45,614 nucleotides of DNA, from contig CAJFCJ010000065.1 of the NCBI GenBank assembly GCA_904063045.1, forward strand, positions 117,311-162,924. The letters are read 5' to 3'. This DNA is from Dimorphilus gyrociliatus. Taxonomy: Eukaryota; Animalia; Annelida. The position numbers were made by a program, and so were the translations under genes. Below are positions 1 through 45,614 of the stretch, piece after piece. The first letter of the stretch is position 1. Each line of letters starts with the position of its first letter. The notes beneath the pieces are model-generated. The model was not told the DNA's origin and did not search any database. It saw nothing but the letters and a program-made list of their open reading frames with translations.

Positions 1-1503
1 CTATGCAATAACAAACTTGCAAGCACTGAATCAATTTCAGTTTGTTTAGCCATTTCCAATCTATCAAACAGAACTTCTGTTCTACATTCTGTAAATTTCG
101 GTTAAAAGTGTTCATTGAGCGAAATGTTTGTTTTACAAATAGTTATTGGACATTAGAATGCAGGCATTACGTCATTTCCTTAACTGCACACACACCTACA
201 CACATACACACATAAACATTACGTTTTATTCTGTTTACATCCTCTTTGACCTGTTGCAAAGATAAAATGTTACTCAAATTTTTCTTCATCATTCTATCAG
301 GGTTATGATTTGAATATTTTACTGCATAATTTCTCATCCGAACCATCCAGACAATCTTCTACAAAATTACAAACTAAAGCATAAGTTAAAGATAGATCAG
401 ATGAAAAACAGTTAAATTGTTCCACTTGTGAGAAAATTGAACAGTTTCTCTCATCTTCGGATGACGGACAATCAACTTTACCATCACAAACGTATACCAT
501 ATTTATATACGTTTGACTTTGATCGCAGACGAAAATGTTTATGCGTTGAGTACTATTGAAACTGAATCTCCTAATAAAGTGTTGTTTATCAATTTTAGAA
601 TTAAAGTGCAGAAATACAAGAAAGTTAACTTGGTTATATTCAAATAGTTTATTAAAACAAAAAAAAAGAATTCATCATTAAGTCACCAAGTTAGCTTGGA
701 AATATAAAACTAACAATTTGTAAACAGTTTCATTTTAAAGGCTTCTTCTATCAATATCATACTGTTGAGTTATCAAAGGAGCTTTCAATTTCAAAGGTCA
801 CCTTGAAACACAGTTACTTAATTGTTTCTATAATTCTTCTTATCTGCATCCATATTACATTATTATGTTTTTCTTGCAAATGTTCCATATTCACACATTG
901 GTAAACAACCTATCTATTTCCTACAATTACAATAAAACAAAGAACAAAGCTTGTCCATTCTATTAATTATAAAATTAATGAAATATTACTAGACATTTTA
1001 AACTTGTTTATACTTTTTTTATTTTATGAAATGCAGTTTTCTAAGTAACAATTAAAGATTTTCACACGTCAATTCAATAACAAATTAGATAATGCAATTC
1101 TAGTTTGTAACATTCTCCTTAGGCTTTTCCCAAATGCGAAAATGTCCAATCTATCACCATTTTCATCCAACATATACATTTTCACTACCAATAGCATCCA
1201 TCTACTCTGCTCTTCTTTAACCTAATTAATTTAAAACAAAAATAAGAAGTTTAACACTGAATTGTTTTACAATTTTATAGAATATTTTTCAACCTGAACA
1301 GCTATTGTATGAAATGAAATATTGCCTCCTAATGCCAATTTAGAGACATGGCAAAAAGAGATTGCAGTTGTTATTGATTTTGAAATCTCATGTATACTCG
1401 CTATTGTAAACACTGGAAGGGAACTTTTACATTTTTCCAAATTTTTTAAAGAAACATCTAAAGAGAGAAAATGATTTTGCATTTTAGAGAAAAAATCAAA
1501 ATC
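1..1503 (-). CDS. GRL101/LGR-like receptor paralog A, partial (C-type-lectin-like exons plus a double-LDLa exon; remainder runs off the left edge)
   Basis: Exon ~303-600 encodes VYVCDGKVDCPSSEDERNC...LVCNFVEDCLDGSDEKLC, the same double-LDLa exon seen in the three other copies. 1267-1503 (KCKS...SITTAISFCHVSKLAL) resembles the start of a degenerate C-type lectin domain. Upstream exon boundaries are uncertain. Confidence 0.6.
187..214. repeat. Imperfect (CA)n microsatellite
   Basis: cacacacacctacacacatacacacata read directly. Confidence 0.7.
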
Positions 1504-1635
1504 TATAAATAGAAATATAAGCAAATAAGCTATTAGCTGTTTGTTCAGTAAGTAAACAATTATATCACATACTATCTTCCAACTGCCTATTTAACATCAT
1601 TTTCATAGAAATTTCACTGAAAATATTGAATACTG

Positions 1636-4600
1636 TTATATGAAAAGAAAATGTTTAAATATTTTGAAAGAACAGACTGTTTTATTTTTTTCTCTAGTAA
1701 AGAAGAATTATAATGATTTTTCATATCTTGTAATGAGTATAACAGTGGATTTATCACTGCATTCAAAGGAAAAATCACAATCACTATTGTAGTATAAAAC
1801 TCTTTGGAGATAATTAGTTGAAAAAATACTGAGTAGATTCCTATAAGGTATTATTTATTTTCAATGATTTTAAGTCTGCCTAAATTTCAAAATTCTACTA
1901 AATCACTAACCTAACAAAGAAATTGGAAACCAACACAAAATATTTGTTAGGACAATTAGAAATACTTTCACTTTAATCTTCCTCTGTTGAGCTTCAAAAT
2001 TCAATTTCTCAACTAGATTTTTTGTTTTTAAAGTTCTTTTCCAAATAATAAAGTAAATAATACAAATTACCAAGCATACAGTGCTAACAAAACAACCAAA
2101 GAGCAAAAATGAGTAAAACCATCCTTCATTTTTTTCACTTGAAATATGTAGTGTAAAACAAATGGCACTATTTGAATAATATTCCTATATAAAAAAGTAT
2201 GATTGATTGAAAACATTAGTGTTGAGAGTATATCAAATAATAAATTGTTTGCTTACACCATAAATAAGAACTGGTAGAACAGAACAGATAATTGAGAATG
2301 AAAATATGAATAATAGAAAAAGCCACTTTTTAAAAGAAAGAAAAATTTTTAACCAAGGATAGACAATTGTTTGGAACCTTTCTAATGTTATAAGCATCAA
2401 ACTCAGAACTGATAATTGAATAGAAAAACTACAAAATATTCCAATTATTGAACAGCCTAAACTATTTCTCCATTTAAAATCATTTTCTATATAATTTCCT
2501 CTAAAAGTTAAGTCAACAATTCCAATTGAAATGAAATAGATTGAAGTACTCAAATCTGCAAATGTCAAAGTTATATAGAAAATATTTTTCTTCTTTTTAC
2601 AGAAAAGCAGCCTGAAAATTAAAGATGTTAAATTTTCAAAAAATGCTAATAGGCCTAATAGCCATATAAGAGTTTTCAAAAAGTTTGATTCTAATAAATC
2701 ATCACAAGAATTGAAAAGAGATTTGTCAGGTTTACAATTCTTTACATTCATTGAATATTTCCATGCAAAGCAGCATAACTCAAAATATTTACTTGTTAAA
2801 TTTTCAAGTTTTTGTAAGTGTTCCATAAGAAATTTACCATCAGCTAAGAAAATTATTGTATCTTGTAAATTGAGATTTTTTAAAAATACAAGATGATAAA
2901 ATGACTTGGCATGGATTTCTCTGATATGGCAATAACTGAGATCAAGATGTTCAAGTTTATCAAGATTTGCGAAAAGTTCAGATGCAATTGAGTTTAGGTT
3001 TGTTCTTGATAGATCAAGCTTTCTTAGATTTTTAAAAATACCAAAAGAAAAGTTTGATGGTCTAAACAGAAAACTTTTGCTAAGTATCAAAATTTGAAGC
3101 TTATTATCCAAATTTTCAACTAATTTCTGCAAATATACGACTCCATTGTGACTTGCATTTAAAAAAAATACATTTGGAAAATGTCTAAGCATTCTATCCA
3201 TAGTAATATTACTCATTATTACTGTTAGATATGAAACAGATGGGTGAATTTTATTGAAAATTTTGTATAAAAAATGAAAATTTGAAATGTATAATTTTTT
3301 TCCATAAAAAGTCTTAGAGTTATTTAAAGTTTTTACAGTAAACAAGTTAAAGTTACACTTGACATTGTAAAAATTTTCACAGGAGCAGTAAATTGGGCAG
3401 GAATTTAGAGCAATGCAGTAAATTTCATCACTTCCTTGGATACAATCCACAATTCCATTACAAACATCAGAGAGGAGAATATAAAATCTTTCTTTACGGC
3501 ATTTGAAAAAACCCTTTGGTTTAAAATTTTCTAAAGTGAATGAAATTATGAATAATGGAATGAATTTTTGTTTTTCTGGCCCCAATTTATATATATATAT
3601 ATATAGATATATACCACAGTCAAGTTCATCATCATATTCTTCACAGTGAACAACACCATCACACACTTGTTTTATTGAAATACAGTAATTTGTATTTCTA
3701 CATAAATATGCACCATTTTTGCATTTATCAAGTTTACATCCAAGTAGATGCTTATATGGATAATGAACTTTTGTTAATAAATTGCCTGTTGAGTCATACT
3801 CAACATAACAATTTTGCTTGCTTATATCTATTATGTCATCCATTATATTTGAACATATAGTATTTTCTTCACTGGTAAATTTTTTCCTACAGATGGCCAA
3901 TGTTTCGTCGGCAGAATCAAAACAATCTGCATGAAAATCACATTCTTTTGAGCTAGGCAGACATTTCTCATCACAGGGGAAATATTTATCACTGCATTCT
4001 AAATGAAAAAAAAAACACCTATGAAATAAAGAATGATTCTGGGAGATTTCATCTCTTATGTTTGGGCGTTTTTTTTTTATCAAAGAATTAGCAAGAGAAG
4101 CTGAACTAATACATGTTCAAAAAATATTGTCAGAGGGGAAATTCAAAAGATTAGAGAATGGAAAAAATATGAAAATCTTCAGTCAAATATTTTCTATTTT
4201 GGGATCAGTTTGAAAAAAAAAGAAAAATCAATTTGGATATTCTCTTAGAGCATTAGTACTATTTTTATATATCAGTATATATACTGTATATATATTATAT
4301 TTAATCGATTTTTAATATTTAATTAATATATGTTTAATATAGTAAAAATAGTCCTAGAAAATACACAACACATTCCTACAAATGGACGAAAAGTCCAGAA
4401 TAAAATGAAAAAATGTCCCTGCAAAAGGGATGAAATGTCCCGACCCCAAAAATTATATGTACAGGGTTACTTAAAGAATTTTTCCGCTTACCAGTTACTT
4501 CTGTAGAATTTTCCTGAAAACTGGTAGGACATATTTCATCAGAACCATCAATACAATTGATTTCACTGTTACAAAAATAGGTTGAGTTAATGCATTTGAA

Positions 4601-7600
4601 ATTCTTGCACCTGTGTTTGAATTGATATTCTTCTAATTTTAAGCTGTGATATAATACAGACTAAAACCTTTTGCTTGTTGATGAGCAATCATCCCACACT
4701 GTTTAAAGAGATGTCATTAAAAGGTGTGTTTATATATTCTAAATGGATTATTAGGGAAGAGGTTTAAAATAAATTCTTAAACCATTTTTCATAGAATTGA
4801 TCAATTGCAACTTTATTTGAAAAATCACTTCTTCTTATGTCAATGATTGAGAGAAACAAGAATATTATAATTATATAACAGATTTACCACAGTTTTTCTC
4901 ATCAGCTCCATCGGAACAATCCCGTAAATGATCACAAACATATTTATAGCTTATTTTGTAACCATCTCCACACTGGTATTCATCTAATTGAGGGCAATTT
5001 TTTTCATCTTCACCAGAGAAACAATCCTGATAGCCATCACACTGATAAATTCTATTAATACAGATTTCATCCTCTAAACAAAGGAATAAATGCTGAGAAC
5101 ACATATCTTTATTGATATCAAGGTGTAAAGATTGACTAAGTATTCTTCCATTCTTTCCTTTCAATCCATCAACTATTTTTTAATGAGGAAAAATATTTGT
5201 TCTCACTTTTGTGGCTATTTTCAGTTTTTACCTGCTGGGTTAATGCATGGTAGAAATGTTATTTGTTTCATTTTACATATAGAAGGTTCAATGATGTATG
5301 ATTCAAATTTTGAAGTGAAGAAGTTGTTTTTTTTCTTAATTTTAGGTGGCAGTTCAAGTTTTTTATAAATAAAACATTTGGAAATTTTAGAAATTGTTGC
5401 TTGCTTAATAGCATTGTCATATAGAATTCTGCCACAAAGATCATCCACTAATCTTTGGATGATGAAGGACTTAATTAAAATGTTAAATAGTACTTTCTTT
5501 TTAAATTTTGGTTACATAATCACCTAAAATGAACTGGTTCAGTTGAAGTAAAATCATATGGTTTGTTATCTAAATGAACTATGACTGATCTATTTCTTCT
5601 ATCTTTTATTGTTTTGAGTTCTACAATATACAAATGAAGTATAATGGATTAATGTTAGAAGACATATATTCACTTCCAGGTAAATTGAAATATAAAATAT
5701 TCGATTCATTCCTTTCTAATGACATAAACATTTCAATAAATTTAAAAAACTCATATTGTTCAGATGATATAAAGCTTAGTGTACTATTTTTCCTTCTACA
5801 AACATTTTCACTTGTATCAATAGATATTTTGTTTTTGTAATGCATTAATAGAAAACAGTAACTTTTAAACAGAAATGCATCTTTGTTCTGACATACTGCA
5901 ACCATATAAAAGTAAGAGACATTTTAAAAATTATATTTTAAATTTACAAAAAAGACCTTGACCATTATTTAAACATTTTATTTCAACATAAAAAAATTTT
6001 CTTTCTTGTCTACTGTTTAAAACTGAATTTATTATTTCATCATTTGCATTTACAGTACACAAAGATCTAGTTTCATTTTTCAATTGAGTACATTTCATAC
6101 TTAGATAATAGTTTAGAAACTTTGCTGATTTATAGGTATAGCTAAAAATTTTGCCAAATTTAAAACCAAATGTTTTACACAGATAATTCAATTGCTGAAA
6201 TTTTAATGATTCAACTGTTGTTTGAAACCAAACATTTTTATAAAGTATTTGTAAATTCCCAACAAAATGTGTAAGATTGTGATTTGTATTAAAATTTAAA
6301 ATACTTTTAGTGTTTCTGAAAAGTCTATAATGAAAATCTATAGAAAAAATTTTCTTGATTATAGAAATATTGTGTATTTAAAAACAGAAAGAAAAACTAA
6401 AGATGAAAACCTTTATATGATCCTGCTTCACAGAATATAAATAATGCTTTAATAAAATAACGAGTAGTTGACATTTTACAAGTAGAAAAATCATTATTCT
6501 TCAAGTTACAATTTGAAAATGATATTGAATTATCATAAAATTTGTTACTAATTGTTCTACAATTTTTCTTAAAATTTAACATTCTATATTTTCCAAAATT
6601 CATAACTTTATAGCTTGGTCCAAGTATTTTATTACTTAATTTACATAAAGATGATCCCATCTTAAAATTATCCTCTTTCTCATTGAAAATCAATGGAAAA
6701 TGTCCCATCGTTTTTGAATTAACCATAAAAGATATTCCAACTGGAAAGTATTTTCCAAAAATTATCTCCTGAAACAAATTTGGCATTTCTTCAATAACAA
6801 AATCTAGAAAAAAAAAAATCCAAATAAGAAGATGAAAAGAATTGCGTTTTCATCCATCAACCTTTTAACTCGGGAAAATTACAAAGAAAAATTTGTTTAC
6901 TAAAATCATTGAGTTGATTAATTAAGTAAAATTTAAATGATCCATTATTTTGTAATATAGCAGATTTATCATTAACTAGGTAAATATTTTCATGATTCTG
7001 TCGATAGAATAATGCTCTTTTGCATAGATTTTCATTCTTTACATTACGATCTCTGAATAAGAGAATAGTTTGTCCATTATATCTTACATACAGTTGATAC
7101 TTTGAATGTCTATTTATTTCATAGGCAAACATAACTAGTACAAAAGGTGAGAAATTACTTTTATATTATATTATCATTTTTAAAATTAACAGAAAATATC
7201 CTTTCTTTCTGTATATTTAATCATTTTGTTATTATTCAATACCTAGATATAAGAATGGAAATCATGGATATTTTCTACTATATATATTTTGCTTCTCTCT
7301 TTACAAGGTTTATTAGTAATGAAACATTTTAGGCACATTAAAGCTATCTTGACATTCTTAAGATGGTTATACGAATACCTTTTGAGAAGAAGTTTAAAAC
7401 TATTTTAACAAGAAATTTACACAAACAATTCACAACTTACAATTCAGCTTTGTTATCATCAAATGCCAAAACATATTCTGGTTTTTCTAATGGGAATGTA
7501 GAAATTCTTATTTTAAAAAAATCATAATTTTATCTTACTATATTTCCTTAGTTTGCATCCTTGAATCAGGTTAAACTTTGGATCATATCCCATTGAATAG

Positions 7601-7866
7601 CAAATATTTTGAACAAATTCAGTTGTAAATTGAGTTTGTGAAAATGGAATAAAAGCAATTTTTCCAGTTTTGTTTGTTACTAATATTTTAATATTTAATA
7701 TTCCATAACTAAAATATTCATTTTCTTCTATTTTCTCAAGGAAAAAATTCGCATTTTCTTGTTCAAAATTCATTAAAAACCTTCCTTTGAAGTATTGACA
7801 ATATGGTAAAATTTCAGATACAAAATTAATAACAATTATAAGAATACAATGAAAAATTAAAGGCAT
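1636..7866 (-). CDS. GRL101/LGR-like GPCR paralog B: signal peptide - SRCR-like x3-4 - C-type-lectin-like - LDLa array - LRR - 7TM (multi-exon; one likely in-frame TAG at 4661-4663)
   Basis: ATG 7866 with a hydrophobic N-terminus (MPLIFHCILIIVINFVS). SRCR-like exons: YGILNIK...QNICYSMGY (7570-7720) and GNLQILYKNVWF...LNYLCKTFGFKFG (5950-6290). CTL-like VCQNKDAFLFKSYCFLL...ENVC (5620-5900). Many LDLa repeats (CDG..DC.DGSDE) and LxxLxLxxN LRRs. Hinge LCCFAW...DSLFNSCDDLL, TM3 ITLERF, spliced EYYSNSAICF, TM6 NILCWFPI, TM7 FPLNAVINPLLYS, stop at 1636-1638. Confidence 0.85.
4383..4447. mobile_element. Solo right-hand terminus of a MULE/foldback-like DNA transposon in an intron of paralog B
   Basis: GC-rich island in an AT-rich intron, with repeated aaatgtccc units. 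It ends in CGACCCC, identical to the right end of the intact MULE at 22171-22177. No matching left end was found. Confidence 0.5.
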
Positions 7867-8826: not shown

Positions 8827-8997
8827 GATAATCCCTCCCCCAAAAATTTCACTATTTTTGTTGTGTGATGTTTAAAAAATATCAAAGTCAGAAATGATCA
8901 CCTCTATGATGACTGCATATCAAATAGCTGTTTTCCTGTAACTGGAATAATTTATCAAGTTCATAGATACCTTCTTTCCTTTGTATTTATTTCAGCT

Positions 8998-9417
8998 AAC
9001 CTACAAACACACATCATCTCCACCTGAAAAAAAGCTAAAAATGACTAAATCAGCTGAAAAACTGATGTGTACAGTTTTCTGGGACTGTTCGGGATTAATC
9101 CATCTTGAATTTATGGTGAAACAGTCAACTCAATAGCATTTGTGGAGACCCTAAAGAGATTAAGAAGGAGACTGCATAGGATAAGGCCTGGAAAACAGAT
9201 TATTTTACAACATGACAATGCAAGACTCCATACCAGTCTGCACACAACTCTTTTTATCAGAAATCAGGGATGGTCTGTCTGTCCATATCCCCCATGCGGC
9301 CCTGATTTGGCCCCATCTAATTTGTACCTGTTTGGATGAGTGAAAGATCGTATCAGGGGAGTTGATTACCAAAAATTAGATGAGCTAAAAAAAAACATCA
9401 GGGAATTTTTGAGGAAT
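8998..9417 (+). mobile_element. Mariner transposase fragment (5'- and 3'-truncated pseudogene)
   Basis: Encodes YKHTSSPPEKKLKMTKSAEKLMCTVFWD, ILQHDNARLH and YPPCGPDLAPSNLYLF. Directly alignable to the full-length copy at 32530-32955. Has a small deletion, a stop and no TIRs. Confidence 0.9.
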
Positions 9418-9449
9418 CAAAATATCTCACAAGTTGAGTGTGTTGAAGC

Positions 9450-10926
9450 AGCATCCATCCTTAAATGTCTCTTGAAAAGATATACTGTAGTGTCTAAATT
9501 GGAAAAAATGCTCAATAGCCAAGGAATGATTCCATAGTTCATTATGCCGATCCAAAATCATACAATAATTTCTTTCCATAACATTATTATCAAATTATTT
9601 TAATTCTTTGATTCCAGCTACTGTTAATTTAGGCTTTTCTGGAAGTAAACATCTTATTTTTAGACATGAAATATACATTAAATTCAATGATTTAGCTATG
9701 CAAAGGCTTTTACTGGGTTATGTCGAAGAACATTGCATTATATTAATATATTCAGATTTGAATTTAGCAACAAAAATTCCAAAATGTTAACATTTCAACT
9801 AACAATATGAATGAGTTTAAAGGTCTAGTACACAAAGGATCTCATTCCAGTAATCAGGTAAAAAGGCCTGTTTTTTTTTTGTTTGTTTAAGTGTATACAG
9901 TAAAAAAATTGGAACACCATAAATTTTGATAGGCTGAACATTTTTTATTTTTTCTGTCTTAAATATTAGATTAAACATAGACATAAATGAATATCTTCTA
10001 AATAGAATTAGGTGACTTAATTAGAATTAAGCAAGTTTACACAAGTTTGTAAACTTAATTCATCTAGTCTATAGTTTAGATCCCCTGCATAAAGGACTGA
10101 CTCATTTGCTGGTATATTTAGAGTCTGAGTAAATGATGCCATTTCTTGACACTGAGCTTCTCTTATAGTATTATCATCACCACCTCCACTTTGTAAGTGA
10201 GTTGACATTAAATTATAGAGCATTGTAACACCATTAACAGTTTTCTCAATTCTGGCGTATGAGACACCTTTTGCTACAAAAATTTCTGCTGTAAAAAAAA
10301 TTACAGCTTTAAATATATAACTTTCTTCTCTTACTATCGGCCATTTTGAAGTAATAAATATTCCACCATTTATTGCTAATATACTGTCTACAATGGATTT
10401 TGCATACTTGAAACCATAGTAAGAGAGTACTTTTTTCAAAGACAAGTTGTTTTCATCACAGCCACCAAGAAACACTTCTTGGAAAGCAATGGCATCGACA
10501 TCTGGAATAGTTTCCAATATCCATGAAGGTATTCTGCAAGTTCTTTCTCTCTGACCATCAACACTTACAAAGTAGAAACGCTCAAATATATTGTACATCA
10601 AAAATTTGAATTCATTGGCTGGTGTTGTAGATAGTTTTGGTTTTGGTTTTACAACACAACGTATAGCACGTCCTCCATTAAAACAGTCAAAATCTTCTGC
10701 GAATGAATGTGATATATCATATTCGAGCCCATAGTTTACACAATCTTGAGGGACAGCATTACAGTTCTGTTACCAAGTAAATGGCCTAGATGCTGGTTGA
10801 GGATCAATACATCTTCCATTTACTGGATTTTTTTCTCTGACCAGATGAACACAAATATAGATGTCTACAGAAATTTACTGACAGAAAAGAAAACAGAAAA
10901 ATGTAAAATATCTTTAGGAATGTCAT
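9450..10926 (-). pseudogene. Secreted sphingomyelinase C-like (EEP/nSMase fold) gene, apparently intronless, disrupted
   Basis: ATG 10926 gives the signal-like MTFLKIFYIFLFSFLSVNFC, then a Cys-rich segment, then EEP motifs LMYNIFER, DVDAIAFQEVF, NGGIFITSKWPI, AKGVSYARI, STHLQS, YAGDLN. Lesions: +1 A in an A7 run (~10830), TAA at ~10778, stop at 10017. Downstream sequence is degraded, so the left boundary is approximate. Confidence 0.75.
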
Positions 10927-17975: not shown

Positions 17976-19507
17976 GTAATTAAGCAAGTCCTGTTACTTA
18001 AATATTTCACATTTTTCATTTCAAGAACAACCCTGCCATAGATTTTTTGGGGGGACTGTATTTCAACATATAAAAAATGATCAATTTCATTTGGATATCT
18101 TTGAAGAAAATCAAGTGTTTAGCCTAGGACTTTTACAGCTGTGGAAATATGGAAAGTTAAACAGGAATTATACTGTGAAACAGTTATCTTTTCAATTTGA
18201 AATATACAATTTTTTTTGCCATAAATTAAATTATGATAACATTCATTCAGTTGGTTTTCAGTGTTTATTTCCCGTAAAGAAATATTTTGCAACATATTCC
18301 CTAAATAAAAAAGGAATATTTATTAAGTTAGTCATTTTCATTGAGTTCTTTTTTGTCATTTAAAAATACTTACTCTTTTCTTTTTTTCCAGAGTGTTATC
18401 ATCTGAAAATGACAAATCTGGATTGTGTTTGAAATGCTTCAAGAAAAAATCAAATTATTGCTAAAGTAAATTCTAGTCAAAAAAAATTACTATTTTATTT
18501 TGTTTTCTTTAGATATTTTTGCGTTAAAGTCGAATTTAAAGACAAGAAAAAAATATCTATTATTTTTGAGTAGTTTCGAAAAAATTTATCAAATTTTTTC
18601 AAATGATAAAGAAAATATTGAAATTTGTGATAAAGCCAACTTTTTTATTCAAAATATTAATAACATTGAAAAGAGAATTGAAAAGCGGAAATATTGTATT
18701 TTTAATAGAAATCTGAGCTGTTCAATTATTCAAATGAAGGCAAGAAATATTACATTTCCACAACAATATAAATGCATTTTCTCACAACTTAAAGGTTTGT
18801 CCATTTCATACTTTTCGCTACTTATTTTCGAATGATGTGAACATTATATGCTCAAAATTTGGATTTGAATCTGGAACTCTTCTTTCATACCACGATAAGT
18901 TTTTTTGGGAGAAAACAACTGTCAACTCTTTTGAGAGATTCTATTATTTTCTTACAATGAAATGTCCACAAAATGCAACTAATCTCAAAGAAGAATGCTC
19001 TCTGGAAGACGACCTGCATCAGAGGTTAGCCCTACCCATTCAAAGAATTCAATAAACCTATTGTATTAAACAAAATCTAGCTATTCAAGAAGTGGCATAT
19101 TTCAAATTGAATGTTCAAGCATTCTCAGTAATTTTCTATATAACACGTGACCTCTGTTATTTAAATAAACATTTATCCATAAAGATAACTGTACTGGAAA
19201 GGATGTTTTATCATTTCGAAATATTTGTTATAAATTCTTTAATTTTGATAATCCATTATCAAATTTGGAAATGTCTGCCTTTTGCCAGATATTCAATTAT
19301 ACTCTCATAGATTTTCAAACTCTCTCCTCTACTATTCATGTTTTAGCTTTAACAAGATTTTCTAATAGTATTTTGAAGAAATTCACTTCTTCCAATGATC
19401 TATTATCAGCCATTGAAAGTATGGTAACCAAATCATTTATTATATTTTTCTCTCTTCAATTTTGGTTTTTGTATTTTCTAGCTTTACACACCACAGTTGA
19501 TATTAAT

Positions 19508-22177
19508 GGCTTAGGGTCAGAACGCCCCTGGTCAGTACGCCCCAGGTCAGAACGCCCCAATTTTGGGTCAGAACGCCCCATTCTTGATTTCGAATGCCCC
19601 ACTCATGAGTCAGAACGCCCCACTGATTTTTGAAGAACATAATATTTTTTAATGCTGTACTTATTAAATTAAAAAAAGTCAATTGAATATAAAAATATAT
19701 ATGCATAATGTATTTTTTGTCTTAAAGTACAAAAGCTTAAACAAATATAATAAGTGATCACAAAAAAAGAAATAATTTTTCAAGCAATGTTCAAGTCAAT
19801 TAAACCCTTTAAGAGATTATCTAAACTTAATTCTCTTACTTCAAACTTCTTCCACAACTCAAAGATAATATCCTGCAAATCTTTATATTTATTCTTCTGA
19901 TTCTGTCTCATTTTATTTTCCACCAACATATCCTCATAAACTTCAATAAGGCTGCTTTCTCTATGAAGTTCAGTGATAAGAGTATAAAAGTTTTCATTGC
20001 TTTTCAAATTTTGATTGATTCTTGTGTGCCAAGACTCTACATGATTATTTGTACGAACTATTAATTTATAAACTGACCAATTTTCTGGTTTCCAAATATT
20101 GCTTTCAATGTAAGTAGATTCCATATACTCAAGAAGATCAGCATATAAATTCAGTTCCAAAAGTTCCTCTTTAATTTGATAAAACTTTTGTTTGATGAAT
20201 GATGCTGGTAAGTATGCTAGACACATTAGTTTTCTTAACACATTTCCTTTATAACCTTTCATTTTATAGTCCTTGATGTATCCTAATTTCTAAAAAGAAA
20301 ATTTGTATTTGTTAATTTCTTAATTTCACAAATTAAATCTGTAACAGAATTGTTATAATTACTTTAATTTACCTGTATGTTTTTAAGAATTGCTTGTTTA
20401 AAATGAAAAGCACATCCTTGTAGATCAGAATCAACAAAAGCATTTTTTAAAGATATCCAAAGAGCTTTTTCAAAATCAAGAACAAACTTTTTTGGGCTTT
20501 TTCCATCTATTAAGATTTTTAACTCCTTGTAAAGAAAAATATATCTTTAGAATTTTTACTCAAATATTTACTTTAGAAAGCCAACCTCAAATATCAATGA
20601 ATAATGTTTCTTCTTCTTTCCTGTCATGAGGACAAACATTAAAGGAACTTGTTTATATTCACCTTCTTTTCTTATAAATCCATGAATTGTAAACAATTGG
20701 TAAAAAGGTTTTCTCACAATTTTAAATGTGGCATCAATAAACCATATCTTACAATGTTTCAATAATTTAATTTGATGGTCAGTTGCAAACATCATGTTTC
20801 GGCTTTTCTTCCCTTTTATATCTTTTAAGAAAAAATTATCTGGAATTTCATTTAAATTTAATTCAAACATAATGTTTTCTGGGTGCTTTGGTCTGGCACC
20901 TTCTCTGTATCTATTAGCAGATCTTTTCATGACATCAATGCTTGGAATATGAGAAATATCCTTTCTGAACTTCAGACTGATATCTTCTGCAATTCTTTTA
21001 CCAGATTTGTCTTTATCAATAATTGCAGCTTCCTTTAAATTTAACCTTGCTTCAATAATTTTTCTCATATCATTTTTCTCTCTTTTGTGAATGTGATTAG
21101 AATTTTTCAAAATGAACTTTAAATCTTTTTGAATTACAGATGCAAGACATGGTGATTTTTTAGTTCTTTGACTACATTTCCAGGTAATGGTTGTTTCACT
21201 TGATCTTTTTACAGTATAAGTAAAATTATTGTGAAGAAGAATATCTTTTCCTTTTCTGCTCCCATTCTTAAATATTTCAAAATCATGTTTTAAATTATCA
21301 TTTAGACAAAGCTCTCTTGTATCATTAAAAGAAGATTCATTATTTATATCAATTCTTCTTACAACTGGACTATTTTCTGTAACAATTTTAGCAGGTTGAT
21401 GTTGATCTTCTCTTGAAATTCCATCATTATCAATATCAATATCTTTATCACAACTCTCCATTCCATTATTCCCTGGAGTACTTGAAACATCAGGGAAATT
21501 AGATTCAAAGTCAAAAGATAACCTCAGCTATAGTAAAACATTAAATAGTTTTTTTAACAGATATTTGTTAAATATTTTGTACCTGTTCGGAACTTGAACT
21601 TTCACTAACAGTTTCATTTCCAAATACTTTTGAACATGTTGGTGATTTTTTGTTTTCCAGCTTTTTTATTTTAACAATTAGCTTTTTGTTTTTTATATTA
21701 AAACAGTCTATACAATAATCTGCATCTGAGGAAATGGTTAAATAGAAAAGAAATATTAAAGAATAAAATCTTACTATTTGAACATTTAGCATGGTAAAAG
21801 TGCCTACATAATTTGCATCTAAACTTCTTTTGAGTCCAATGAAACTTCTTCATACATTTCCAACAAGTTTTTAAATTCATCCTCCTTTTTTCAGTGAGAC
21901 ATTAACAGCAAAAAAATTAATTATACTAAGATGAATTATATTTAAGCAACACAATTTCTGAGAATAAACTGATAAAAAAAAAACTGGTAAAAATATTTAT
22001 AATAACTGGTATATAAGAATATTTTTCTCTCAGCATTGTTTTCTATAATTCTCTAAAGAGAGTGGGGCGTTCTGACTCATGAGTGGGGCGTTCAAAATCA
22101 AGAATGGGGCGTTCTGACCCAAAATTGGGGCGTTCTGACCTGGGGCGTACTGACCTGGGGCGTTCTGACCCGACCCC
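19508..22177 (-). mobile_element. Intact autonomous Mutator-superfamily (MULE; Phantom/Rehavkus-like) DNA transposon, 2670 bp
   Basis: About 110 bp near-perfect TIRs built from repeated GGTCAGAACGCCCC units. GG...CC termini. Exact 9 bp TSD GATATTAAT at 19499-19507 and 22178-22186. Confidence 0.95.
19780..21880 (-). CDS. Spliced PHD-finger + FLYWCH + MULE DDE transposase (5 exons)
   Basis: Exons join in frame through GT-AG introns: CWKC...CKLCRHFYHAKC/NADYCIDC (PHD); GKDILLHNNFTY...WKCSQR...CLA...HIH (FLYWCH); WFIDATF (D1), FVLDFE (D2), GCAFHF, RTNNHVESWH (E). No stops found. Confidence 0.88.
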
Positions 22178-25100
22178 GATATTAATAATAGAACAATTGA
22201 AGCTACTGGACTTTCCTATCCACTTGACTATCTTACAGATTACATGTTTTTAAAGAAAGAATATCTAAAATCCTTTGTTAATGACTACATATCGAATCAA
22301 CAACTCAATCGCGCCAAATGTCTAATTTACAAAATTTACAACAAATTTACGAAAGTAATTCCAACAACTTGTACAAATATTGAATATCATGAAATCATTT
22401 GTCAAAAAATACCAAATTTAAAAAAGAAACTTGACTATAATTTCTTTATGATTGAACTCGACCATTTTAATTGTTCATTGTATTTGTTTCTTTGCATTCG
22501 GACAAAAATTTGTATAAATGTAGTTTATGTTTGCGATGGAGAAAATGATTGTCCACTTGGAGAGGATGAAGAGAATTGTTCTGGTGTAATTGAACATGAA
22601 CAATTTCATTGTCATAATTCAAAGCAAACTATTCATCTTCATCTAGTTTGCGATTATAATTTTGATTGTATCGATCATTCCGACGAAGAATTTTGTCGTA
22701 AGATTTTTTTGTCAAATTTTACAAAAGAGCCTTAAGAGTTAAATTAATAAATATTTTTTGGCAATTTGGTGTTTTTCAGACAGGAAGTTGTACAAAAATG
22801 ATGAAATATTTGTATTAATATGAAACATATTAATAAATACAACAATGCGGCAATAAACAATGCATTAATGAAGGATTGTTGTGTAATAATGAAAGGAATT
22901 GTTTCGATACAACTGATGAAAAGTGTTTTGGCAGGGAAAGTCTTACAAATCAAGTGAAAGGTAAATGTTAATTGGCTTTAAAATGTTATTTTTTAGTTAT
23001 AACCCTAAAGCTTTAAGATTGTAAAAAGAGTCAAGTGTGTAATGAAATTGTCGATTGTCTCTTCGGTAGCGATGAACTTGTTTGTTCCGAAAAAGAAATT
23101 CAAAATAGACATTGTAAAACTGATACTCTTCTAAAGGTCTACTGCAACATTAACAATCAACAAAATGGCGGCCAACTCAAGAATTTTATTTCTAGATTTG
23201 TCTTTTAATAAATTACTTGAATTGTCAATAAAAGATTTTCAGTCTCTTATCTATTTAAGAATTTTAAATTTGAATTATTGTTCTTTTAAACACGTTACGA
23301 ATGGATTTTTAAATTTTCAAATAAATCTCGTTGAAATTTATTTACGTAATTCAATTGTGGACGATATTACAGAAAAAATCCGTTTGGATAGATTTGGAAA
23401 AATTGAGAAGATTGTTAGCAATAGTTTCAAATTGTGTTGTTTCGCTTGGAAATATCGTGGAAAACTGGTAGACTGTCGGCCGAATTTTTCAATATATTTC
23501 ACTTGTTCAACATTACTTAGTTCGCGAATGACAAGAATTGTTTCATGGACAATTGGAATAGCCGGTTTATTGGGCAATGGCGTCTCTCTTTTGCTAATTG
23601 TTTCCAGTGTAAAAGTATCAAAAAAATTCAGATTTCTTACATCATTTTCTGATCTTTTAACGTCGTTCTACGTCACTTCCGTGGCTGTAGCCGATTTTTA
23701 TTTTGGTACTGCTTACCTAGAAGCCGATTCGTTTTTGGAGAAGAAGTATCCAATGCCAAACATTGGAGATAGTCATGACTTTTTCATTAATTCTATCTTC
23801 TATTTCTATCCTATCAGTTGCCATAGAAAGGCATAAAGCTATTGTCTACCCGTTATCATTGTACAAGATTCCAATAGGAGATAGTTGGAAAATTGTATTA
23901 ATAGTACTCTTAATAAGTTTTCTTTTAGCAATAACACCTGTATTTTTATATCAAGTAGTTAAATCATAATGGAGAATTAGGCCTATACATTTCCAGAATT
24001 TTGTTGCAGAAATCTGAATCAACCGTTCCCATCTGTTTTAATATACATATTCGCAGCGATAGAACACAGGAATGGCTATATTCGTTTATAGTATTTGGTG
24101 TTTTTACCTTTGTAATTAACCTTTTCATTGCAATTTTGTATTTTCAAATACTTTACAAGTTTACATCGTCAATTAATGAATTCCAAGCTAATTTTAAAAA
24201 AAGACAGACAGTTGTTCTAACAAAAACAGTTTTTCTAATTGCGTTAACAATCCTTCTGTGCTGGCTCCCTCTATCGATTATAGGAAACTTGGGAATATTT
24301 TCTAAACTTCACTTTCAAAATGACGTCTACAGTATCATTGTAATTTTAATTGTTCCAATAAACTCCCTTTTAAATCCAACTATTTATTCATCCAATGAGC
24401 TCGTTTCTTTCATTAAAGAACATCAAAAATCCCGAAAGGAAAATTTGTTTGTCTTCAAACTTTTTACCAGTTTTTTAAACACTTAACCCCATTTTAAAAC
24501 CACTTTCAGTTATTCAGCTTTACAAACAGCGAAAGATGACACTCTAGCAGACGGTTTGTCAAAAATTCATATGAATAACCTCTGACATTTCTTTTAAAAC
24601 GAACAGCTATAAAAATGTTGGCAGTTTCCATTTCTTAACCCAAAATGCTGCCTTCAAATATCCTACTTGGGGCCGTTTTCTGTTGATCCCAATTGTTACA
24701 CTACTCATTGATATTGCACAAGTCAATTATTGTTATTTATCTTCTTAGGAAAAGGAAAAGAAAGATTATTTTATCGTTTGTTCTCAATTTCAAACTTTAA
24801 ATGAAGAGAATGAAAAAAATGATTTGCTACAATTTGGAAATAATATTAGGAAAATTCTACAAAAAAAGAAAATGATGGAATAGTAAAACCATAAATTCAA
24901 TACAAAAACACACCAATATTTTTCCAGATATTTTGATACCAGTTATCATTAACATTTCAAAGATTTAACAAATATCTTCTTTAGTCAATAGTTAATAACT
25001 TTTTGTGAATATTTCTCAATAAAAAATTCGTTTTGACATATAAAAATCTAGAGATTCAATTTCTTTATGATATTCTGACCATAAATCATTTTTTAAATAA

Positions 25101-41880: not shown

Positions 41881-42111
41881 AAATATTTTCTATTTGAATT
41901 AATATGAAAAAAGTTAATCACTGAAAATATTTTAGAAAAGATTTAGGTTGAAAAGAAGATAAAAATTTTTATCCCTACTTTTCATTTGAGTTTCATATCT
42001 AATTGAGTGAATTATGTCATTTCTGTGATAAAATGATAATTTAATAGGTATGCCTAGAGACAACCCTAACCAATAGATTTATAGTGAAACCCCTTTCCCG
42101 GATCTATAAAC

Positions 42112-45100
42112 CTATTTTTTTGTTTTTTGTAACAAAGAAAGACCTTTCTTTAATTCTCTTATAGGACAACTTGTTATAGTAGTCCACGCATTGGCCGAGT
42201 AGAAAGATGATTGGATTGAGAAATGAATTTAATGGTAAAATCAAAATTATGATCAAACTATAAACATCATTCTTCATTTCTAAATTTATTGCTTTGGCTA
42301 ATATTCCTGAAGAAAAATGAAGCAGATATAGATGTTTTGTTACTTTTGGATTTTTTATAAAGAAAATGTGCCATGTAAGGGTTTCAAGTTTAACTTTTAG
42401 GTTAAAATTTTGAAAATTTTATTATTTAATCTATTTTTTCTACCACAAAGTTTGAATTTTTATCCTAACATCTAATGTCAAGGTCACATCAAGCTTATTT
42501 TGAAATTTTCAAAACCAAATTCCTCATTTCAACTAAAATCTGCAATTGCCCTTGCCCTTGTCTTTTAGGAACATTAAGTCTCACTTTTAGAGCCCTTTTC
42601 GAACTATGGATCTTCTCTGAACTATTTTTTTTTTTACCTAAAACAAAGCATGGCATCCAAACAAGAATATTGGAAAATACCAATATCAGAACATTTTTCT
42701 TTATTTTCCTTTCTTTCGTGTGACAATTCACCAATTTGGACGATTTTAGAACAACTCTAATTATATGAATATACAAAATACACATAATCAGGCTGCATAT
42801 TGGTATTATTACGCCAAATAATATAAATGAAAACATCCAATCACTTCTCTCTTCGTTCCTTATATAGACATTGAAACAGATTGGAGTAAGGTTATATATG
42901 TTCTATTATATTGGAAAAGGAAAATTTTTTGAGTACTTTTAAGATAAAAGGGACAAGGAGGATTTTTTAGCCTATAATCTATAGGGAATAAAATCCATTA
43001 TCCCTTATCATCATTACCTTTTGTTGCATAAAGTAATGAGATAGCGAAGCGATAAGGCAACAAACTAGAATTGCAAGAGTTGATAGTAGATTAGAGTGTT
43101 TGGAAAAGAAGGATTGAACGAAGGGATTATACGCGGTTTGATGTCTATCGCAAGTGATTAATAGGGTAAAACAGGTTGATAATAGCAGAGAAAGCGTCAT
43201 AATTTTACCCAAGACATAACACCAGATACTATTTCTCCAATAATTGTCATTTTCTAAATAACTACCTCTGTAATAATTATCAACAATTGCAATGGCCAAA
43301 ATGTAGATTGACGTCAGTAAATCGCTCAAAGATAACAATTTGAAATATCTCAATTTAAATCTTCTATAAATCATATTAAAAATAGTTAAAGAATTTGCAA
43401 TAAAACCAAATAATCCATAAAACCAGAATAATAATTTTATATAATTTGAACTAATTAAATTTGAACAGGTGTGAAAAAATGCCGACGACGGATAACAAAT
43501 TACATTCTTTCCTAGAAATTTCCAAGAGAGGCAACACAGTTTAAAACTTGTCCCAAAAAGTTTTTTAAGCCTATTCAATCCTTTTACTAAATGAATTTCT
43601 TCATTTGATGGAAAGAATGTATTATTTAAATGAAGTTCTTGTAAATTTATTGAATTGTATAAGAGATTGTTAGCAATAGTTTTTAATTTACAATTTGTCA
43701 TTTTAAATATTTTCAAGTGATGTAAATTTTGAAAATATACTGATGATAATGACGTTATTTTCGTATACGAAACGTCAAAATGCCTTAAATGTTTACAGTG
43801 AAAATGTTTTAAAAATTCAAGTGTATACATTGAGTTGTTTGATAAAAATAGATACTGTAATAGTCTTAATGAAGAATTATAGATAAATGTTTCATTTGTA
43901 TAAGCATTGTTTGTCACTGATAGATAAATTAAATTTGGAAAATTTCTTACTGGACAACTCAATTTCATTTGAATATTTTCAATTTTTAAAATTAATATTT
44001 TTGTTGAATACTTGAACATCTTTATTGGAATTGAACCAATTATTGTTAATTTTTCAAAATATTTCCCAATTTCACTTAATTTTTTACTATGATTCAACTC
44101 AATACTATTTAATGAATTTGAACTAAAGCTGCAATTCAATTCGAATAATGACGTTTCGTTGCAGTTTTCAAAATGAATTGGATTTTTAGACTTTAAACAA
44201 AATTGTTCGTCACTTCCGTATCGACAGTTGACGACGCTGTCGCAAACTTTTGCCAATAGAATGAAAAGTGTTTCGTTATGACATTTAAAGAAATGTTTTG
44301 GAGAAAAATTGTCTATGGAATACAAAAACCGCTTTAGGGCTGAGTTAGGGTTAGGGTAATAGACTTACCGCAATTAAACTCGTCGTCTTGGTTATAGCAA
44401 TGAATAACACCGTCACAAACTTGTTCAATTGATATACAGTAGTTTTCTCTTTGACAAAGGTATTCTCCAAATTGACATAACCTTTTAAAGCATGGTTCGC
44501 TTAATAGGAATAAATTTGTATTTGGTATTTTCAATGAACTTTCTTTAAAATAGCAGGTTTCTCGATGAGAATCTACAAAAATTCTCACTTTATACTCGTC
44601 ATTTTCACCGCAATCGTATTTTCCATCGTTAATTAACGTATTCGATAAACAGTACGATCCGCATTGTAATTGATACTCTTTGTTGCACACTAACAAAATA
44701 ATGAATGAGCACGAAAGAGATATTTTCTCTTTTCATATTTAAGAAATAAAAATTGGGCAAACTTTTTCGAAATTCCTTTCTAATTGCTCGTTTATTCTGA
44801 CACAATTCATCGCTGGAATCGAAACAATTTCTTTCGTTATTACACACAGTATCTTCTTTAATACATTGAAAATTTGCGCAAGGTCTAAAAGAAAGTGATA
44901 TCTTCAAAACGAATCAATAAAATATCAACTAACGTTTCGTTCGACAAACAATCTCTAATTTCTGAAATAATTATCTATAGATAATACGTATATAGGCCTA
45001 TTTAGTTTGCTTATCGACTTACTACAATAAATCTCATCAGATTGATCTGGACAATCTGCAATGAAATTGCAAACTTTTTGAAAATTGACTAATTTCCCAG

Positions 45101-45614
45101 TTGAATGGCATTTGAAAATAATTGTTGTTTCGTCTTTAACGCAATTTTCTTCGTCCTCGTTTAATGGACAATCAAAAATACCATCGCAAACGTATATGAT
45201 ATTTATGTATGTTTCGCTTCTTTGACAAAAAAATACATTATTGAGTAAACTGGTAGTAGCGCTTCTATTTTGAATTGTTAGCGAATTGAATGAACTTTGA
45301 ATATCTATTTAAAAAAAGTGAAATTTAAAAAGATAATGTATAAACATGACAAACATAGAAATTTGAAATTTAGATACTTTGAAATTTTTGACATATAATC
45401 CAACTTGTCTCGTGATGATTACAATCAATATCCAAGATTTTAAAATATGTTTTAATCCTTTTCGAATTAGCCAAACGCTTGCCTTGTTTCTCTTTCTAAA
45501 ACATTAAAAAAGGATGATAAGCTTTTCTGTCTTTTTTTTGTGGAACACACATACAATAATTTCAATTTTATAACAACTTAACAATTCCGATGAACAGTAG
45601 AAACTTTGTTTTGA
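42112..45614 (-). CDS. GRL101/LGR-like GPCR paralog D (CTL-like - LDLa array - LRR - 7TM; 5' end beyond the right edge)
   Basis: CTL end DCNHHETSWIICQK (~45380-45430). Double-LDLa exon IYVCDGIFDCPLNEDEENC (~45000-45290) and further LDLa exons. LRRs, hinge LCCLSWK...FHTCSNLI, TM3 ITCDRH, spliced PICFNVY, TM6 NILVWMPC, TM7 LPLNSFLNPIIF, stop 42112-42114. One extra T at ~44888. Confidence 0.85.

What the first reader, a model, noticed from the sequence alone, without database searches (positions are those of the whole stretch)
1636..7866. GPCR family with a scavenger-receptor + C-type-lectin + LDLa + LRR ectodomain
Seen: signal peptide, three to four SRCR-like exons and a CTL-like domain upstream of a GRL101-type LDLa-LRR-7TM body. 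The same N-terminal motifs recur in paralog C (EEN..FS.G.L, LCLKCF, IC..FGF), and the CTL end recurs in D. Known: RXFP1/2 carry one LDLa and Lymnaea GRL101 carries a long LDLa array; SRCR and CTL domains are typical of innate-immune and adhesion receptors. Inference: a lineage-specific expansion that couples pattern-recognition-like modules directly to G-protein signalling, as microbe/glycan-sensing or chemosensory GPCRs. This is the best candidate for an undescribed system here.
Basis: partly seen in the sequence, partly recalled or inferred. Interest (0 to 1): 0.85.

Follow-up and report, generated by a model that had tools for sequence, protein, structure and literature searches.

The report
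Worm GRL101-type receptor with lectin-like head
This is an intact, transcribed worm gene for a large GRL101-type cell-surface receptor whose outer end carries one degenerate scavenger-receptor-like module and one lectin-like module; receptors of this type with a lectin-like head are already described in snails, so it is a new variant, not a new system.

Summary
Gene A lies on the minus strand at 7866-1614, with about 15 exons encoding about 1,585 aa. Its body is confirmed as a GRL101/relaxin-receptor-like GPCR: six LDLa repeats, LRRs and a 7TM domain with ERF, CWFP and NPLLY motifs.

Public RNA contigs show canonical short introns. One junction (5172|5232) joins the upstream part to the first LDLa exon.

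Of the claimed "three to four SRCR-like exons", only one is supported (6303-5948). The support comes from sequence and profile tests, not from a fold. That module has lost one conserved cysteine pair. The three modules before it (about 330 aa) match nothing.

The C-type-lectin-like domain (5895-5232) is real but divergent. A profile built from four paralogs hits solved C-type lectin domains (PLA2R, E 3.7e-7). Gene A lacks the EPN/WND sugar-binding motifs.

Six copies were compared: A, the dead copy C and D in the window, E1 and E2 on a Dimorphilus gyrociliatus contig, and one copy of unknown origin. They form one long-branched clade inside GRL101-like receptors.

CTL+LDLa+LRR+7TM receptors are common in molluscs, a brachiopod, echinoderms and a nemertean. 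Snail clusters of them were proposed as pathogen sensors in 2025.

The scan noted similar clusters elsewhere in this genome (s1-081437, s1-084896). The verdict is a new variant of a known kind, of moderate interest.

The parts
7539..7866 (-). Exon 1. It starts at the ATG at 7866, has a hydrophobic N-terminus that may be a signal peptide, and begins orphan module S1 (motif EENEYFSYGIL).
   Evidence: First ATG of the open frame. The 3' border is fixed by RNA joint 7539|7486. S1 is conserved in E2 and C. No family match.
7441..7486 (-). Exon 2, a short piece of module S1.
   Evidence: The 5' border comes from the RNA joint. The 3' donor comes from my own splice model.
7279..7378 (-). Probable exon 3, carrying the LMCLKCF motif at the end of module S1. 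Its borders are uncertain.
   Evidence: Enumeration of frame-keeping GT..AG paths. The motif is conserved in C (18393-18461) and E2 (L001:9317-9415).
6862..7099 (-). Exon 4, orphan module S2. Its 5' border is uncertain.
   Evidence: Open frame and splice model. 28% identical to E2. No match to SRCR or PDB.
6398..6803 (-). Exon 5, orphan module S3 (134 aa, five cysteines).
   Evidence: Splice model. RNA contig 6588-6805. 36% identical to E2. No family or PDB match. AF2 pLDDT 40.
5948..6303 (-). Exon 6, the SRCR-like domain (S4). It keeps cysteines C3, C5, C6 and C8 and the conserved Trp. The C2-C7 pair is lost.
   Evidence: (Pfam SRCR E 0.078). Fold evidence is inconclusive.
5232..5895 (-). Exons 7-9 (5895-5632, 5578-5524, 5452-5232), encoding the C-type-lectin-like domain plus a linker. 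There is no EPN/WND motif.
   Evidence: RNA joints 5524|5452 and 5232|5172. Profile of four paralogs against PDB. hhalign against GRL101 CTLDs 68%. Family HMM hits CTL-bearing GRL101-likes. The 5632/5578 junction is model only.
4880..5172 (-). Exon 10, LDLa repeats 1 and 2.
   Evidence: Pfam Ldl_recept_a 66.3 bits, two stretches. RNA contig 4888-5172 spliced to 5232.
4471..4660 (-). Exon 11, LDLa repeat 3. Its borders are uncertain and there is no RNA contig over it.
   Evidence: Pfam Ldl_recept_a 30.6 bits. Splice model. Depth is 0 over 4115-4714.
3615..4100 (-). Exon 12, LDLa repeats 4 and 5. It is followed by a probable 84-nt in-frame intron (3614-3531) that contains a TA repeat.
   Evidence: Pfam. 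Sequence read directly. E2 has an intron at the same place.
2257..3530 (-). Exon 13, holding LDLa 6, the leucine-rich repeats, the cysteine cluster CCFAWK, and TM1-TM4 with the ERF motif.
   Evidence: Pfam LRR_8 63.5 bits and 7tm_1 33.4 bits. RNA joint 2257|2184.
1911..2184 (-). Exon 14, TM5-TM6 (CWFP).
   Evidence: Pfam 7tm_1 30.3 bits. RNA joint.
1614..1840 (-). Exon 15, TM7 (NPLLY), a short tail and the stop codon at 1616-1614.
   Evidence: Sequence read directly, intron 1910-1841 GT..AG. Paralog matches.
18061..24483 (+). Paralog C, with the same module order (S1, SRCR-like, CTL-like, LDLa, LRR, 7TM) but broken.
   Evidence: TIR element 19501-22184 inside the CTL-like exon. Frame break near 23730.
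42107..45614 (-). Paralog D, covering LDLa, LRR and 7TM. Its N-terminal part runs off the window.
318..539 (-). LDLa pair of a further copy, cut by the left edge of the window.
   Evidence: (tblastn E 1e-14).

Best explanation
Gene A encodes an intact, transcribed type-C leucine-rich-repeat GPCR of the GRL101 kind. It belongs to a tandemly duplicated, fast-evolving family, probably of the annelid Dimorphilus gyrociliatus.

From the N-terminus the ectodomain reads as follows:
- a probable signal peptide;
- three cysteine-poor modules of unknown fold (about 330 aa);
- one degenerate SRCR-derived domain;
- one divergent C-type-lectin-like domain without the calcium/sugar motifs;
- six LDLa repeats;
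- the LRR block.

Shown here: the architecture, the splicing, transcription, intact GPCR motifs, and monophyly of the copies.

Inferred: a ligand is captured by the long ectodomain. The signal then passes through the LDLa/LRR-hinge unit to the 7TM bundle and a G protein, as in relaxin receptors.

The family shows birth-and-death turnover, long branches and separation from the conserved GRL101 clade. I therefore think a variable outside cue (microbial, environmental or from other worms) is a more likely ligand than a conserved hormone. About 50% against 20%, with the rest unknown.
For: - Pfam domains of the body.
- Canonical spliced RNA joints, including the one that links the CTL-like exon to the LDLa exon.
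- Intron lengths of 52-94 nt, which fit the 66-bp median of D. gyrociliatus (PMC7854359).
- Open frame through about 15 exons, with ERF, CWFP and NPLLY present.
- SRCR homology of one module.
- CTLD homology.
- The same module order in C, E1 and E2.
- The public annotation of E2 (DgyrCDS14413) also joins CTL-like and LDLa exons in one CDS.
- Single clade with 100% SH-aLRT, sister to a mollusc-rich GRL101-like expansion that includes CTL-bearing members.
- Dead copy C shows turnover.
Against: - No single read or contig spans the whole gene. The key junction rests on one contig with 25 bases on the short side.
- Exons 3, 4 and 11 have uncertain borders, and there is no RNA depth over exon 11.
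- Pfam gathering thresholds are not met for SRCR or Lectin_C in gene A.
- The SRCR-like module lacks a cysteine pair, and the CTL-like domain lacks EPN/WND and probably one core cysteine. These modules may not bind anything in the classical way.
- Structure predictions failed (pLDDT 62 and 40).
- The tree has long branches and compositional bias.
- Nothing here speaks to the ligand, the tissue or G-protein coupling.
Confidence: 0.7

Rival explanations
1. The receptor works like an ordinary GRL101/relaxin-type receptor, through its LRR and LDLa parts, for an internal insulin-like or other peptide hormone. The degenerate SRCR-like, CTL-like and orphan modules are relics or a spacer with no recognition role.
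For: - The LRR and LDLa parts are well conserved, while the N-terminal modules are degenerate. They have lost cysteines, lack EPN/WND and fall below Pfam thresholds.
- GRL101 has been proposed as an insulin-like-growth-factor receptor (PMC8286064).
Against: - The N-terminal modules keep their order and 28-38% identity across paralogs that have diverged to 48% or less even in the 7TM region. This suggests constraint.
- The family lies outside the conserved GRL101 clade and is tandemly expanded with dead copies, which is unusual for a hormone receptor.
Confidence: 0.2
2. The region 7866-5232 is a separate gene for a secreted or membrane SRCR/CTL-like protein. It only appears fused to the GPCR because of read-through or a chimeric RNA contig.
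For: - The linking joint is carried by one short contig with only 25 bases beyond the junction.
- The run also produced one odd non-canonical joint at 6173|6320.
Against: - The joint is canonical GT..AG and keeps the frame.
- There is no stop codon or terminal exon before the LDLa exon in the model.
- The same colinear order, on the same strand with short gaps, is found in C, E1 and E2.
- The independent public annotation of E2 joins CTL-like and LDLa exons.
Confidence: 0.05
3. Gene A is a decaying pseudogene in a dying family. The RNA signal is background transcription.
For: - Neighbour C is clearly dead (transposon insertion, frame break).
- The domains are degenerate.
- RNA depth is low and patchy.
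Against: - A frame of about 1,585 codons stays open across about 15 exons in a 26% GC genome where stops are frequent.
- All GPCR motifs and all six LDLa calcium-cage motifs are intact.
- The RNA contigs are correctly spliced.
Confidence: 0.05

Closest known systems
GRL101-like GPCRs with an N-terminal C-type-lectin-like domain. Examples are the 12-gene SudRes2 cluster of Biomphalaria sudanica (PMC12297450) and database proteins such as Gigantopelta aegis P0003, Lingula P0132 and Lytechinus P0136.
   Same: - The order CTL-like domain, LDLa repeats, LRRs, rhodopsin-class 7TM.
- Tandem clusters of paralogs with truncated members.
- A proposed role as ectodomain-recognition GPCRs.
- The family CTL profile hits their CTL domains.
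   Different: - The worm copies add one SRCR-like module and about 330 aa of orphan modules in front of the CTL-like domain.
- None of about 145 fetched LGR-type proteins has an SRCR domain.
- The worm copies form their own long-branched clade.
- The CTL-like domain is far more divergent (Pfam not significant).
Lymnaea stagnalis GRL101 and its conserved orthologs (arthropod LGR5, Owenia, Mytilus, crinoid copies), known as type C2 LGRs.
   Same: LDLa array plus LRRs plus 7TM, and the closest 7TM relatives overall.
   Different: - The conserved orthologs are short-branched and reported as single-copy in the ambulacrarians studied (PMC8286064).
- In these data they are listed with only LDLa and LRR ectodomain parts.
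- The worm family sits outside that clade and has six rather than twelve LDLa repeats.
Relaxin-family receptors RXFP1/RXFP2 (type C1 LGRs).
   Same: LDLa module, LRR ectodomain and 7TM. This is the model for how an LDLa/hinge unit activates the 7TM bundle (established knowledge, not tested here).
   Different: They have a single LDLa repeat, no SRCR or CTL modules, and known peptide ligands.
Amphioxus adhesion-class GPCRs with SRCR and Lectin-C N-terminal domains (PMC2246102).
   Same: SRCR and C-type-lectin modules joined to a seven-helix receptor.
   Different: They belong to a different GPCR class (adhesion/secretin-like, with a GPS site). They are not LGRs and have no LDLa-LRR body of the GRL101 kind.

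Membership tests
Rhodopsin-class GPCR (Pfam 7tm_1) | Match to 7tm_1 above the curated threshold, and seven hydrophobic helices | tested here: met
   33.4 bits against a cut-off of 30.5 on exon 13. A further 30.3 bits on exon 14. TM7 is in exon 15.
Rhodopsin-class GPCR (Pfam 7tm_1) | Activation motifs E/DRY, CWxP and NPxxY | tested here: met
   ERF, CWFP and NPLLY read in the spliced model. E2 has ERY.
Type C LGR / GRL101-like | LDLa repeat(s) followed by LRRs directly N-terminal of the 7TM | tested here: met
   Six LDLa repeats (2+1+3) and LRR_8 at 63.5 bits.
Type C LGR / GRL101-like | 7TM region groups with GRL101-like receptors rather than with type B LGRs | tested here: met
   Tree of 58 sequences rooted on LGR4/5. 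The worm clade nests among GRL101-like sequences (88-100% SH-aLRT), but outside the conserved ortholog clade. The best database hits are GRL101-like.
SRCR domain (PF00530) | Pfam match above the gathering score | tested here: not met
   Gene A scores 13.7 bits, E 0.078. E1 scores 20 bits, E 8.6e-4. The cut-off is 26.1.
SRCR domain (PF00530) | Significant sequence or profile homology to bona fide SRCR domains | tested here: met
   Applies to one module only (6303-5948). phmmer E 5e-8, 4 of 4 hits SRCR. hhalign 92%. Family HMM hits SRCR proteins at E 1e-19. Modules S1-S3 are not met.
SRCR domain (PF00530) | Six (group A) or eight (group B) conserved cysteines | tested here: not met
   The alignment keeps C3, C5, C6 and C8. 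The Cys of the WGTVCDD motif and its partner are missing.
SRCR domain (PF00530) | SRCR fold | tested here: inconclusive
   AF2 pLDDT 62.5, with a beta-beta-alpha-beta-beta core. Foldseek found nothing at E below 0.5, although the top hits are SRCR-bearing proteins (enteropeptidase, neurotrypsin, CD5, CD163). VIA-align Z was at most 4.4, to unrelated folds.
C-type lectin-like domain (PF00059) | Pfam match above the gathering score | tested here: not met
   No hit on the separate exons of gene A. The first CTL exon of E2 scores 15 bits, E 0.043, against a cut-off of 22.6. The spliced domain could not be submitted to Pfam.
C-type lectin-like domain (PF00059) | Significant profile homology to solved CTLDs | tested here: met
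   Profile of four paralogs: PLA2R 3.7e-7, FcRY 3.5e-4, DEC-205, NKG2D and CLEC proteins. 23 of 25 hits are CTLDs. The profile covers the N-terminal half of the domain only.
C-type lectin-like domain (PF00059) | Calcium/carbohydrate motifs EPN or QPD, plus WND | tested here: not met
   Gene A reads EPV at the expected place and has no WND. E2 has neither motif. So it is a CTLD, not a demonstrable lectin.
Secreted / type I ectodomain | Cleavable signal peptide | not testable with these tools
   A hydrophobic stretch follows Met1 in A and in E2. No signal-peptide predictor was available.

The most novel reading that the evidence does not exclude
The worm family may be the first rhodopsin-class (LGR) GPCRs with scavenger-receptor modules. 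On this reading the three orphan modules are further, extremely diverged SRCR repeats or new binding domains, and the whole SRCR-CTLD head acts as a fast-evolving recognition surface for microbes or other outside cues wired directly to G-protein signalling.
Probability: 0.2. Interest if true: 0.65.

Novelty: new variant of a known kind. Interest (0 to 1): 0.4.

Why it matters
- It extends the recently described lectin-headed GRL101-like receptors from molluscs to an annelid. It also adds a domain (SRCR-like) that I did not find on any LGR in the fetched proteins or in the searched literature.
- The reference annotation of D. gyrociliatus misses this family. DgyrCDS14413 is a mis-spliced 359-aa fragment of paralog E2, so published GPCR counts for this genome probably undercount it.
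- If the head modules bind ligands, the family would be a small, compact-genome model for asking what such hybrid receptors recognise.
- The degenerate state of the modules and the missing sugar-binding motifs mean the immune or glycan-sensing reading remains a hypothesis.

Tried and rejected
- **Pfam on N-terminal frames.** Scanning each N-terminal open frame gave only a weak SRCR hit.
- **My CTL HMM on gene A.** An HMM built from GRL101-like CTL domains did not score gene A (negative bits). The CTLD signal appeared only through paralog E2 and through family profiles.
- **AlphaFold2, SRCR-like exon.** With a mixed alignment the model reached pLDDT 62.5. Foldseek PDB, VIA-align wide and AFDB Swiss-Prot gave no significant match.
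- **AlphaFold2, module S3.** pLDDT was 40, so the model is unusable.
- **ESM Atlas feature search of S3.** It returned only noise, mostly bacterial methyltransferases at score 0.70 or lower.
- **Profiles of S1, S2 and S3.** Searches against PDB sequences, SRCR, CTL and each other gave nothing significant.
- **Searches for the window's own annotated protein or further paralogs.** None were found. The length window of the tool and the poor annotation explain this.
- **Spliced ectodomain.** It could not be given to Pfam or to structure prediction because it has no contiguous reference. I left that step out.
- **First splice model.** It missed two RNA-proven introns and the last exon. I corrected it with the RNA joints and by reading the sequence.
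- **Odd RNA joint.** The non-canonical joint 6173|6320 was set aside as a probable chimera.
Full report
**Where we are.** The window is very AT-rich (23-40% GC, mostly 25-33%) and comes from an animal genome. Earlier notes of this scan name the annelid Dimorphilus gyrociliatus. In agreement, the closest relatives of the gene (up to 48% identity in the 7TM region) lie on a contig of the D. gyrociliatus assembly GCA_904063045.1. I reached that contig through protein P0019, DgyrCDS14413. The introns found here (52-94 nt) fit the published median of 66 bp (PMC7854359).

**The body of the gene.** On the minus strand, Pfam finds two LDLa repeats in 4874-5179, one in 4379-4660 and three in the large frame 2236-4116. 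The large frame also carries LRR_8 (63.5 bits) and the first half of 7tm_1 (33.4 bits, cut-off 30.5). The second half of 7tm_1 lies in 1909-2184. TM7 with NPLLY lies in 1840-1614, behind a 70-nt GT..AG intron that I read directly. The ERF (DRY position), CWFP and NPLLY motifs are intact. The best database relatives are GRL101-like and relaxin-receptor-like proteins of molluscs and other invertebrates at 22-32% identity.

**One transcript or two.**
- One public run (X1) holds spliced contigs of this locus.
- It shows canonical joints at 7539|7486, 5524|5452, 5232|5172 and 2257|2184, with depth over most predicted exons.
- The joint 5232|5172 ties the last exon of the upstream part to the first LDLa exon.
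- The support is thin: one contig with 25 bases on the short side.
- It is backed by the same colinear arrangement in three paralogs. The public annotation of paralog E2 also puts CTL-like and LDLa exons in one CDS.
- Using these joints, a simple splice-aware dynamic programme and direct reading, I obtained a model of about 15 exons and about 1,585 codons with no stop.
- Exons 3, 4 and 11 have uncertain borders.
- No RNA depth covers 4115-4714.
- One non-canonical joint (6173|6320) is unexplained.

**The N-terminal 670 residues.** I divided them into modules S1 (7770-7279), S2 (7099-6862), S3 (6803-6398), S4 (6303-5948) and a CTL-like region (5895-5232).

*S4 (SRCR-like).*
- Pfam gave only E 0.078 for SRCR.
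- An exhaustive phmmer search of 1.84 billion representative proteins returned four hits, best E 5e-8. All four are multi-SRCR proteins.
- An SRCR HMM that I built from those proteins scores S4 at 18.6 bits.
- hhalign of the family alignment against SRCR gives 92% probability.
- An HMM built only from the four worm paralogs finds the SRCR proteins at E 1e-19 to 2e-9.
- Pfam SRCR reaches E 8.6e-4 on paralog E1.
- The alignment keeps the Trp and cysteines C3, C5, C6 and C8. It lacks the C2-C7 pair.
- The AlphaFold2 model was mediocre (pLDDT 62.5). Structural searches were not significant, although SRCR-bearing proteins head the Foldseek lists.
- S4 is therefore an SRCR-derived, degenerate domain by sequence. 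Its fold is not shown.

*S1-S3.*
- None of the tests gave significance.
- hhalign probabilities were 11% or lower. S1 aligned in register with the SRCR helix at E 0.014 only.
- Family HMMs did not find SRCR proteins, and PDB profile searches gave nothing relevant.
- The AlphaFold2 model of S3 had pLDDT 40.
- These modules are conserved between A and E2 (28-36% identity), and S1 is also conserved in C.
- So "three to four SRCR-like exons" shrinks to one supported module plus three orphan modules.

*CTL-like region.*
- It is split over three exons, so exon-by-exon Pfam saw nothing in gene A.
- The first CTL exon of E2 gave Lectin_C E 0.043 and the CTLD-like poxvirus A33R family E 0.041.
- A profile of that exon from three paralogs, and then from four, was searched against all PDB sequences. 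It returned almost only C-type lectin-like domains: PLA2R 3.7e-7, FcRY 3.5e-4, DEC-205, NKG2D, CLEC1B, CLEC4, CD302 and echicetin.
- hhalign of the spliced family region against the CTL domains of GRL101-like proteins gives 68% probability over 80 columns.
- The family HMM picks out CTL-bearing GRL101-like proteins.
- The domain is therefore a real CTLD.
- Gene A reads EPV where EPN or QPD would be, has no WND, and seems to lack one of the four core cysteines. Sugar binding of the classical kind is not supported.

**The family.**
- The window holds gene A, a broken copy C, a copy D that runs off the right edge, and an LDLa pair of a further copy at the left edge.
- Copy C has a 2.7-kb element with 133-nt terminal inverted repeats inside its CTL-like exon. 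It also has a frame break near 23730 and a mariner remnant upstream.
- The D. gyrociliatus contig L001 holds two more copies, E1 and E2, with the same SRCR-like, CTL-like, LDLa, LRR and 7TM order.
- In a maximum-likelihood tree of 58 7TM regions rooted on vertebrate LGR4/5, all worm copies plus one copy from an unidentified Logan contig form one clade.
- That clade has 100% SH-aLRT support and a stem of 1.9 changes per site. It is sister to a mollusc-rich GRL101-like expansion and separate from the short-branched clade of conserved GRL101 orthologs, which includes the annelid Owenia.
- Long branches and compositional bias call for caution.
- Earlier first-stage notes report similar clusters on two other pieces of this genome. 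I did not test them.

**What is already known.**
- A search with a snail relative showed that GRL101-like proteins with Lectin_C, CUB, VWA or PAN domains ahead of the LDLa-LRR-7TM body are common. They occur in molluscs, Lingula, sea urchins, a nemertean and a hemichordate.
- By my CTL HMM, 64 of 193 fetched proteins carry a CTL domain. None except the four SRCR query hits carries SRCR.
- A 2025 paper describes a cluster of 12 GRL101-like genes with CTL, LDL and LRR domains in Biomphalaria sudanica. It proposes that the CTL head presents pathogen-derived ligands to the GPCR (PMC12297450).
- Amphioxus adhesion-class GPCRs with SRCR and Lectin-C domains were reported in 2008 (PMC2246102).
- No paper in the library holds both "GRL101" and "SRCR".
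- GRL101 itself has been proposed as a receptor for insulin-like growth factor (PMC8286064) and has been noted in starfish sensory organs (PMC6267866).

**Mechanism.**
- Shown: the architecture, transcription with correct splicing, intact signalling motifs, family expansion and gene death.
- Inferred from relaxin-receptor knowledge: ligand capture by the ectodomain, then activation of the 7TM bundle through the LDLa/LRR-hinge unit.
- The pattern of tandem duplication, fast divergence and loss, and the position outside the conserved hormone-receptor clade, make a variable external cue the more likely ligand. This is inference only. The degenerate head modules could also be relics.

**Verdict.** The finding is a new variant (SRCR-like plus orphan modules, in an annelid, unannotated) of a known kind (lectin-headed GRL101-like GPCR clusters).

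Noticed in passing
window 19501-22184: A 2.7-kb transposon with 133-nt terminal inverted repeats (90% complementary). It carries FLYWCH/MULE-like open frames on the minus strand (20568-21461, 19780-20262) and is inserted inside the CTL-like exon of paralog C.
   Followed up: partly
window 23700-24483: Paralog C has a frame break between TM2 and TM3 near 23730. It lacks the TM6-TM7 intron that gene A has (open frame 23959-24483 is continuous). Together with the insertion, this makes C look like a pseudogene.
   Followed up: partly
window 32183-33040 (+), 17164-17918 (+), 8981-9540 (+): One full-length mariner-type transposase frame (285 aa) and two decayed copies. One decayed copy lies directly upstream of paralog C.
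   Followed up: no
window 14541-15680 (-): An intronless 379-aa frame with the look of an ordinary class-A GPCR (DRF motif, seven hydrophobic stretches). It appears unrelated to the LGR family.
   Followed up: no
window 10017-10601 (-): A 194-aa frame that by eye resembles an endonuclease/exonuclease/phosphatase or sphingomyelinase-type protein. It was not scanned.
   Followed up: no
L001:10001-12698 (D. gyrociliatus CAJFCJ010000036.1): The public gene model DgyrCDS14413 (359 aa) is a mis-spliced fragment of paralog E2. It skips the SRCR-like exon and two LDLa repeats and stops before the LRR and 7TM parts. The family is essentially unannotated in the reference proteome.
   Followed up: partly
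window 6173-6320: One RNA contig skips 146 nt with non-canonical ends (TT..GA) at the 5' end of the SRCR-like exon. It is probably a chimera or derived from a paralog, but it is not explained.
   Followed up: no
L002 (Logan SRR23372229 contig, 24.6% GC): It carries an LDLa-LRR-7TM copy that nests inside the worm clade next to gene D. The organism of that run is unknown to me.
   Followed up: no
window 1270-1590 (-): An open frame just downstream of gene A has a motif (…TIASIHE…) reminiscent of the CTLD helix region. It may be the head of the left-edge copy. Pfam found nothing.
   Followed up: partly
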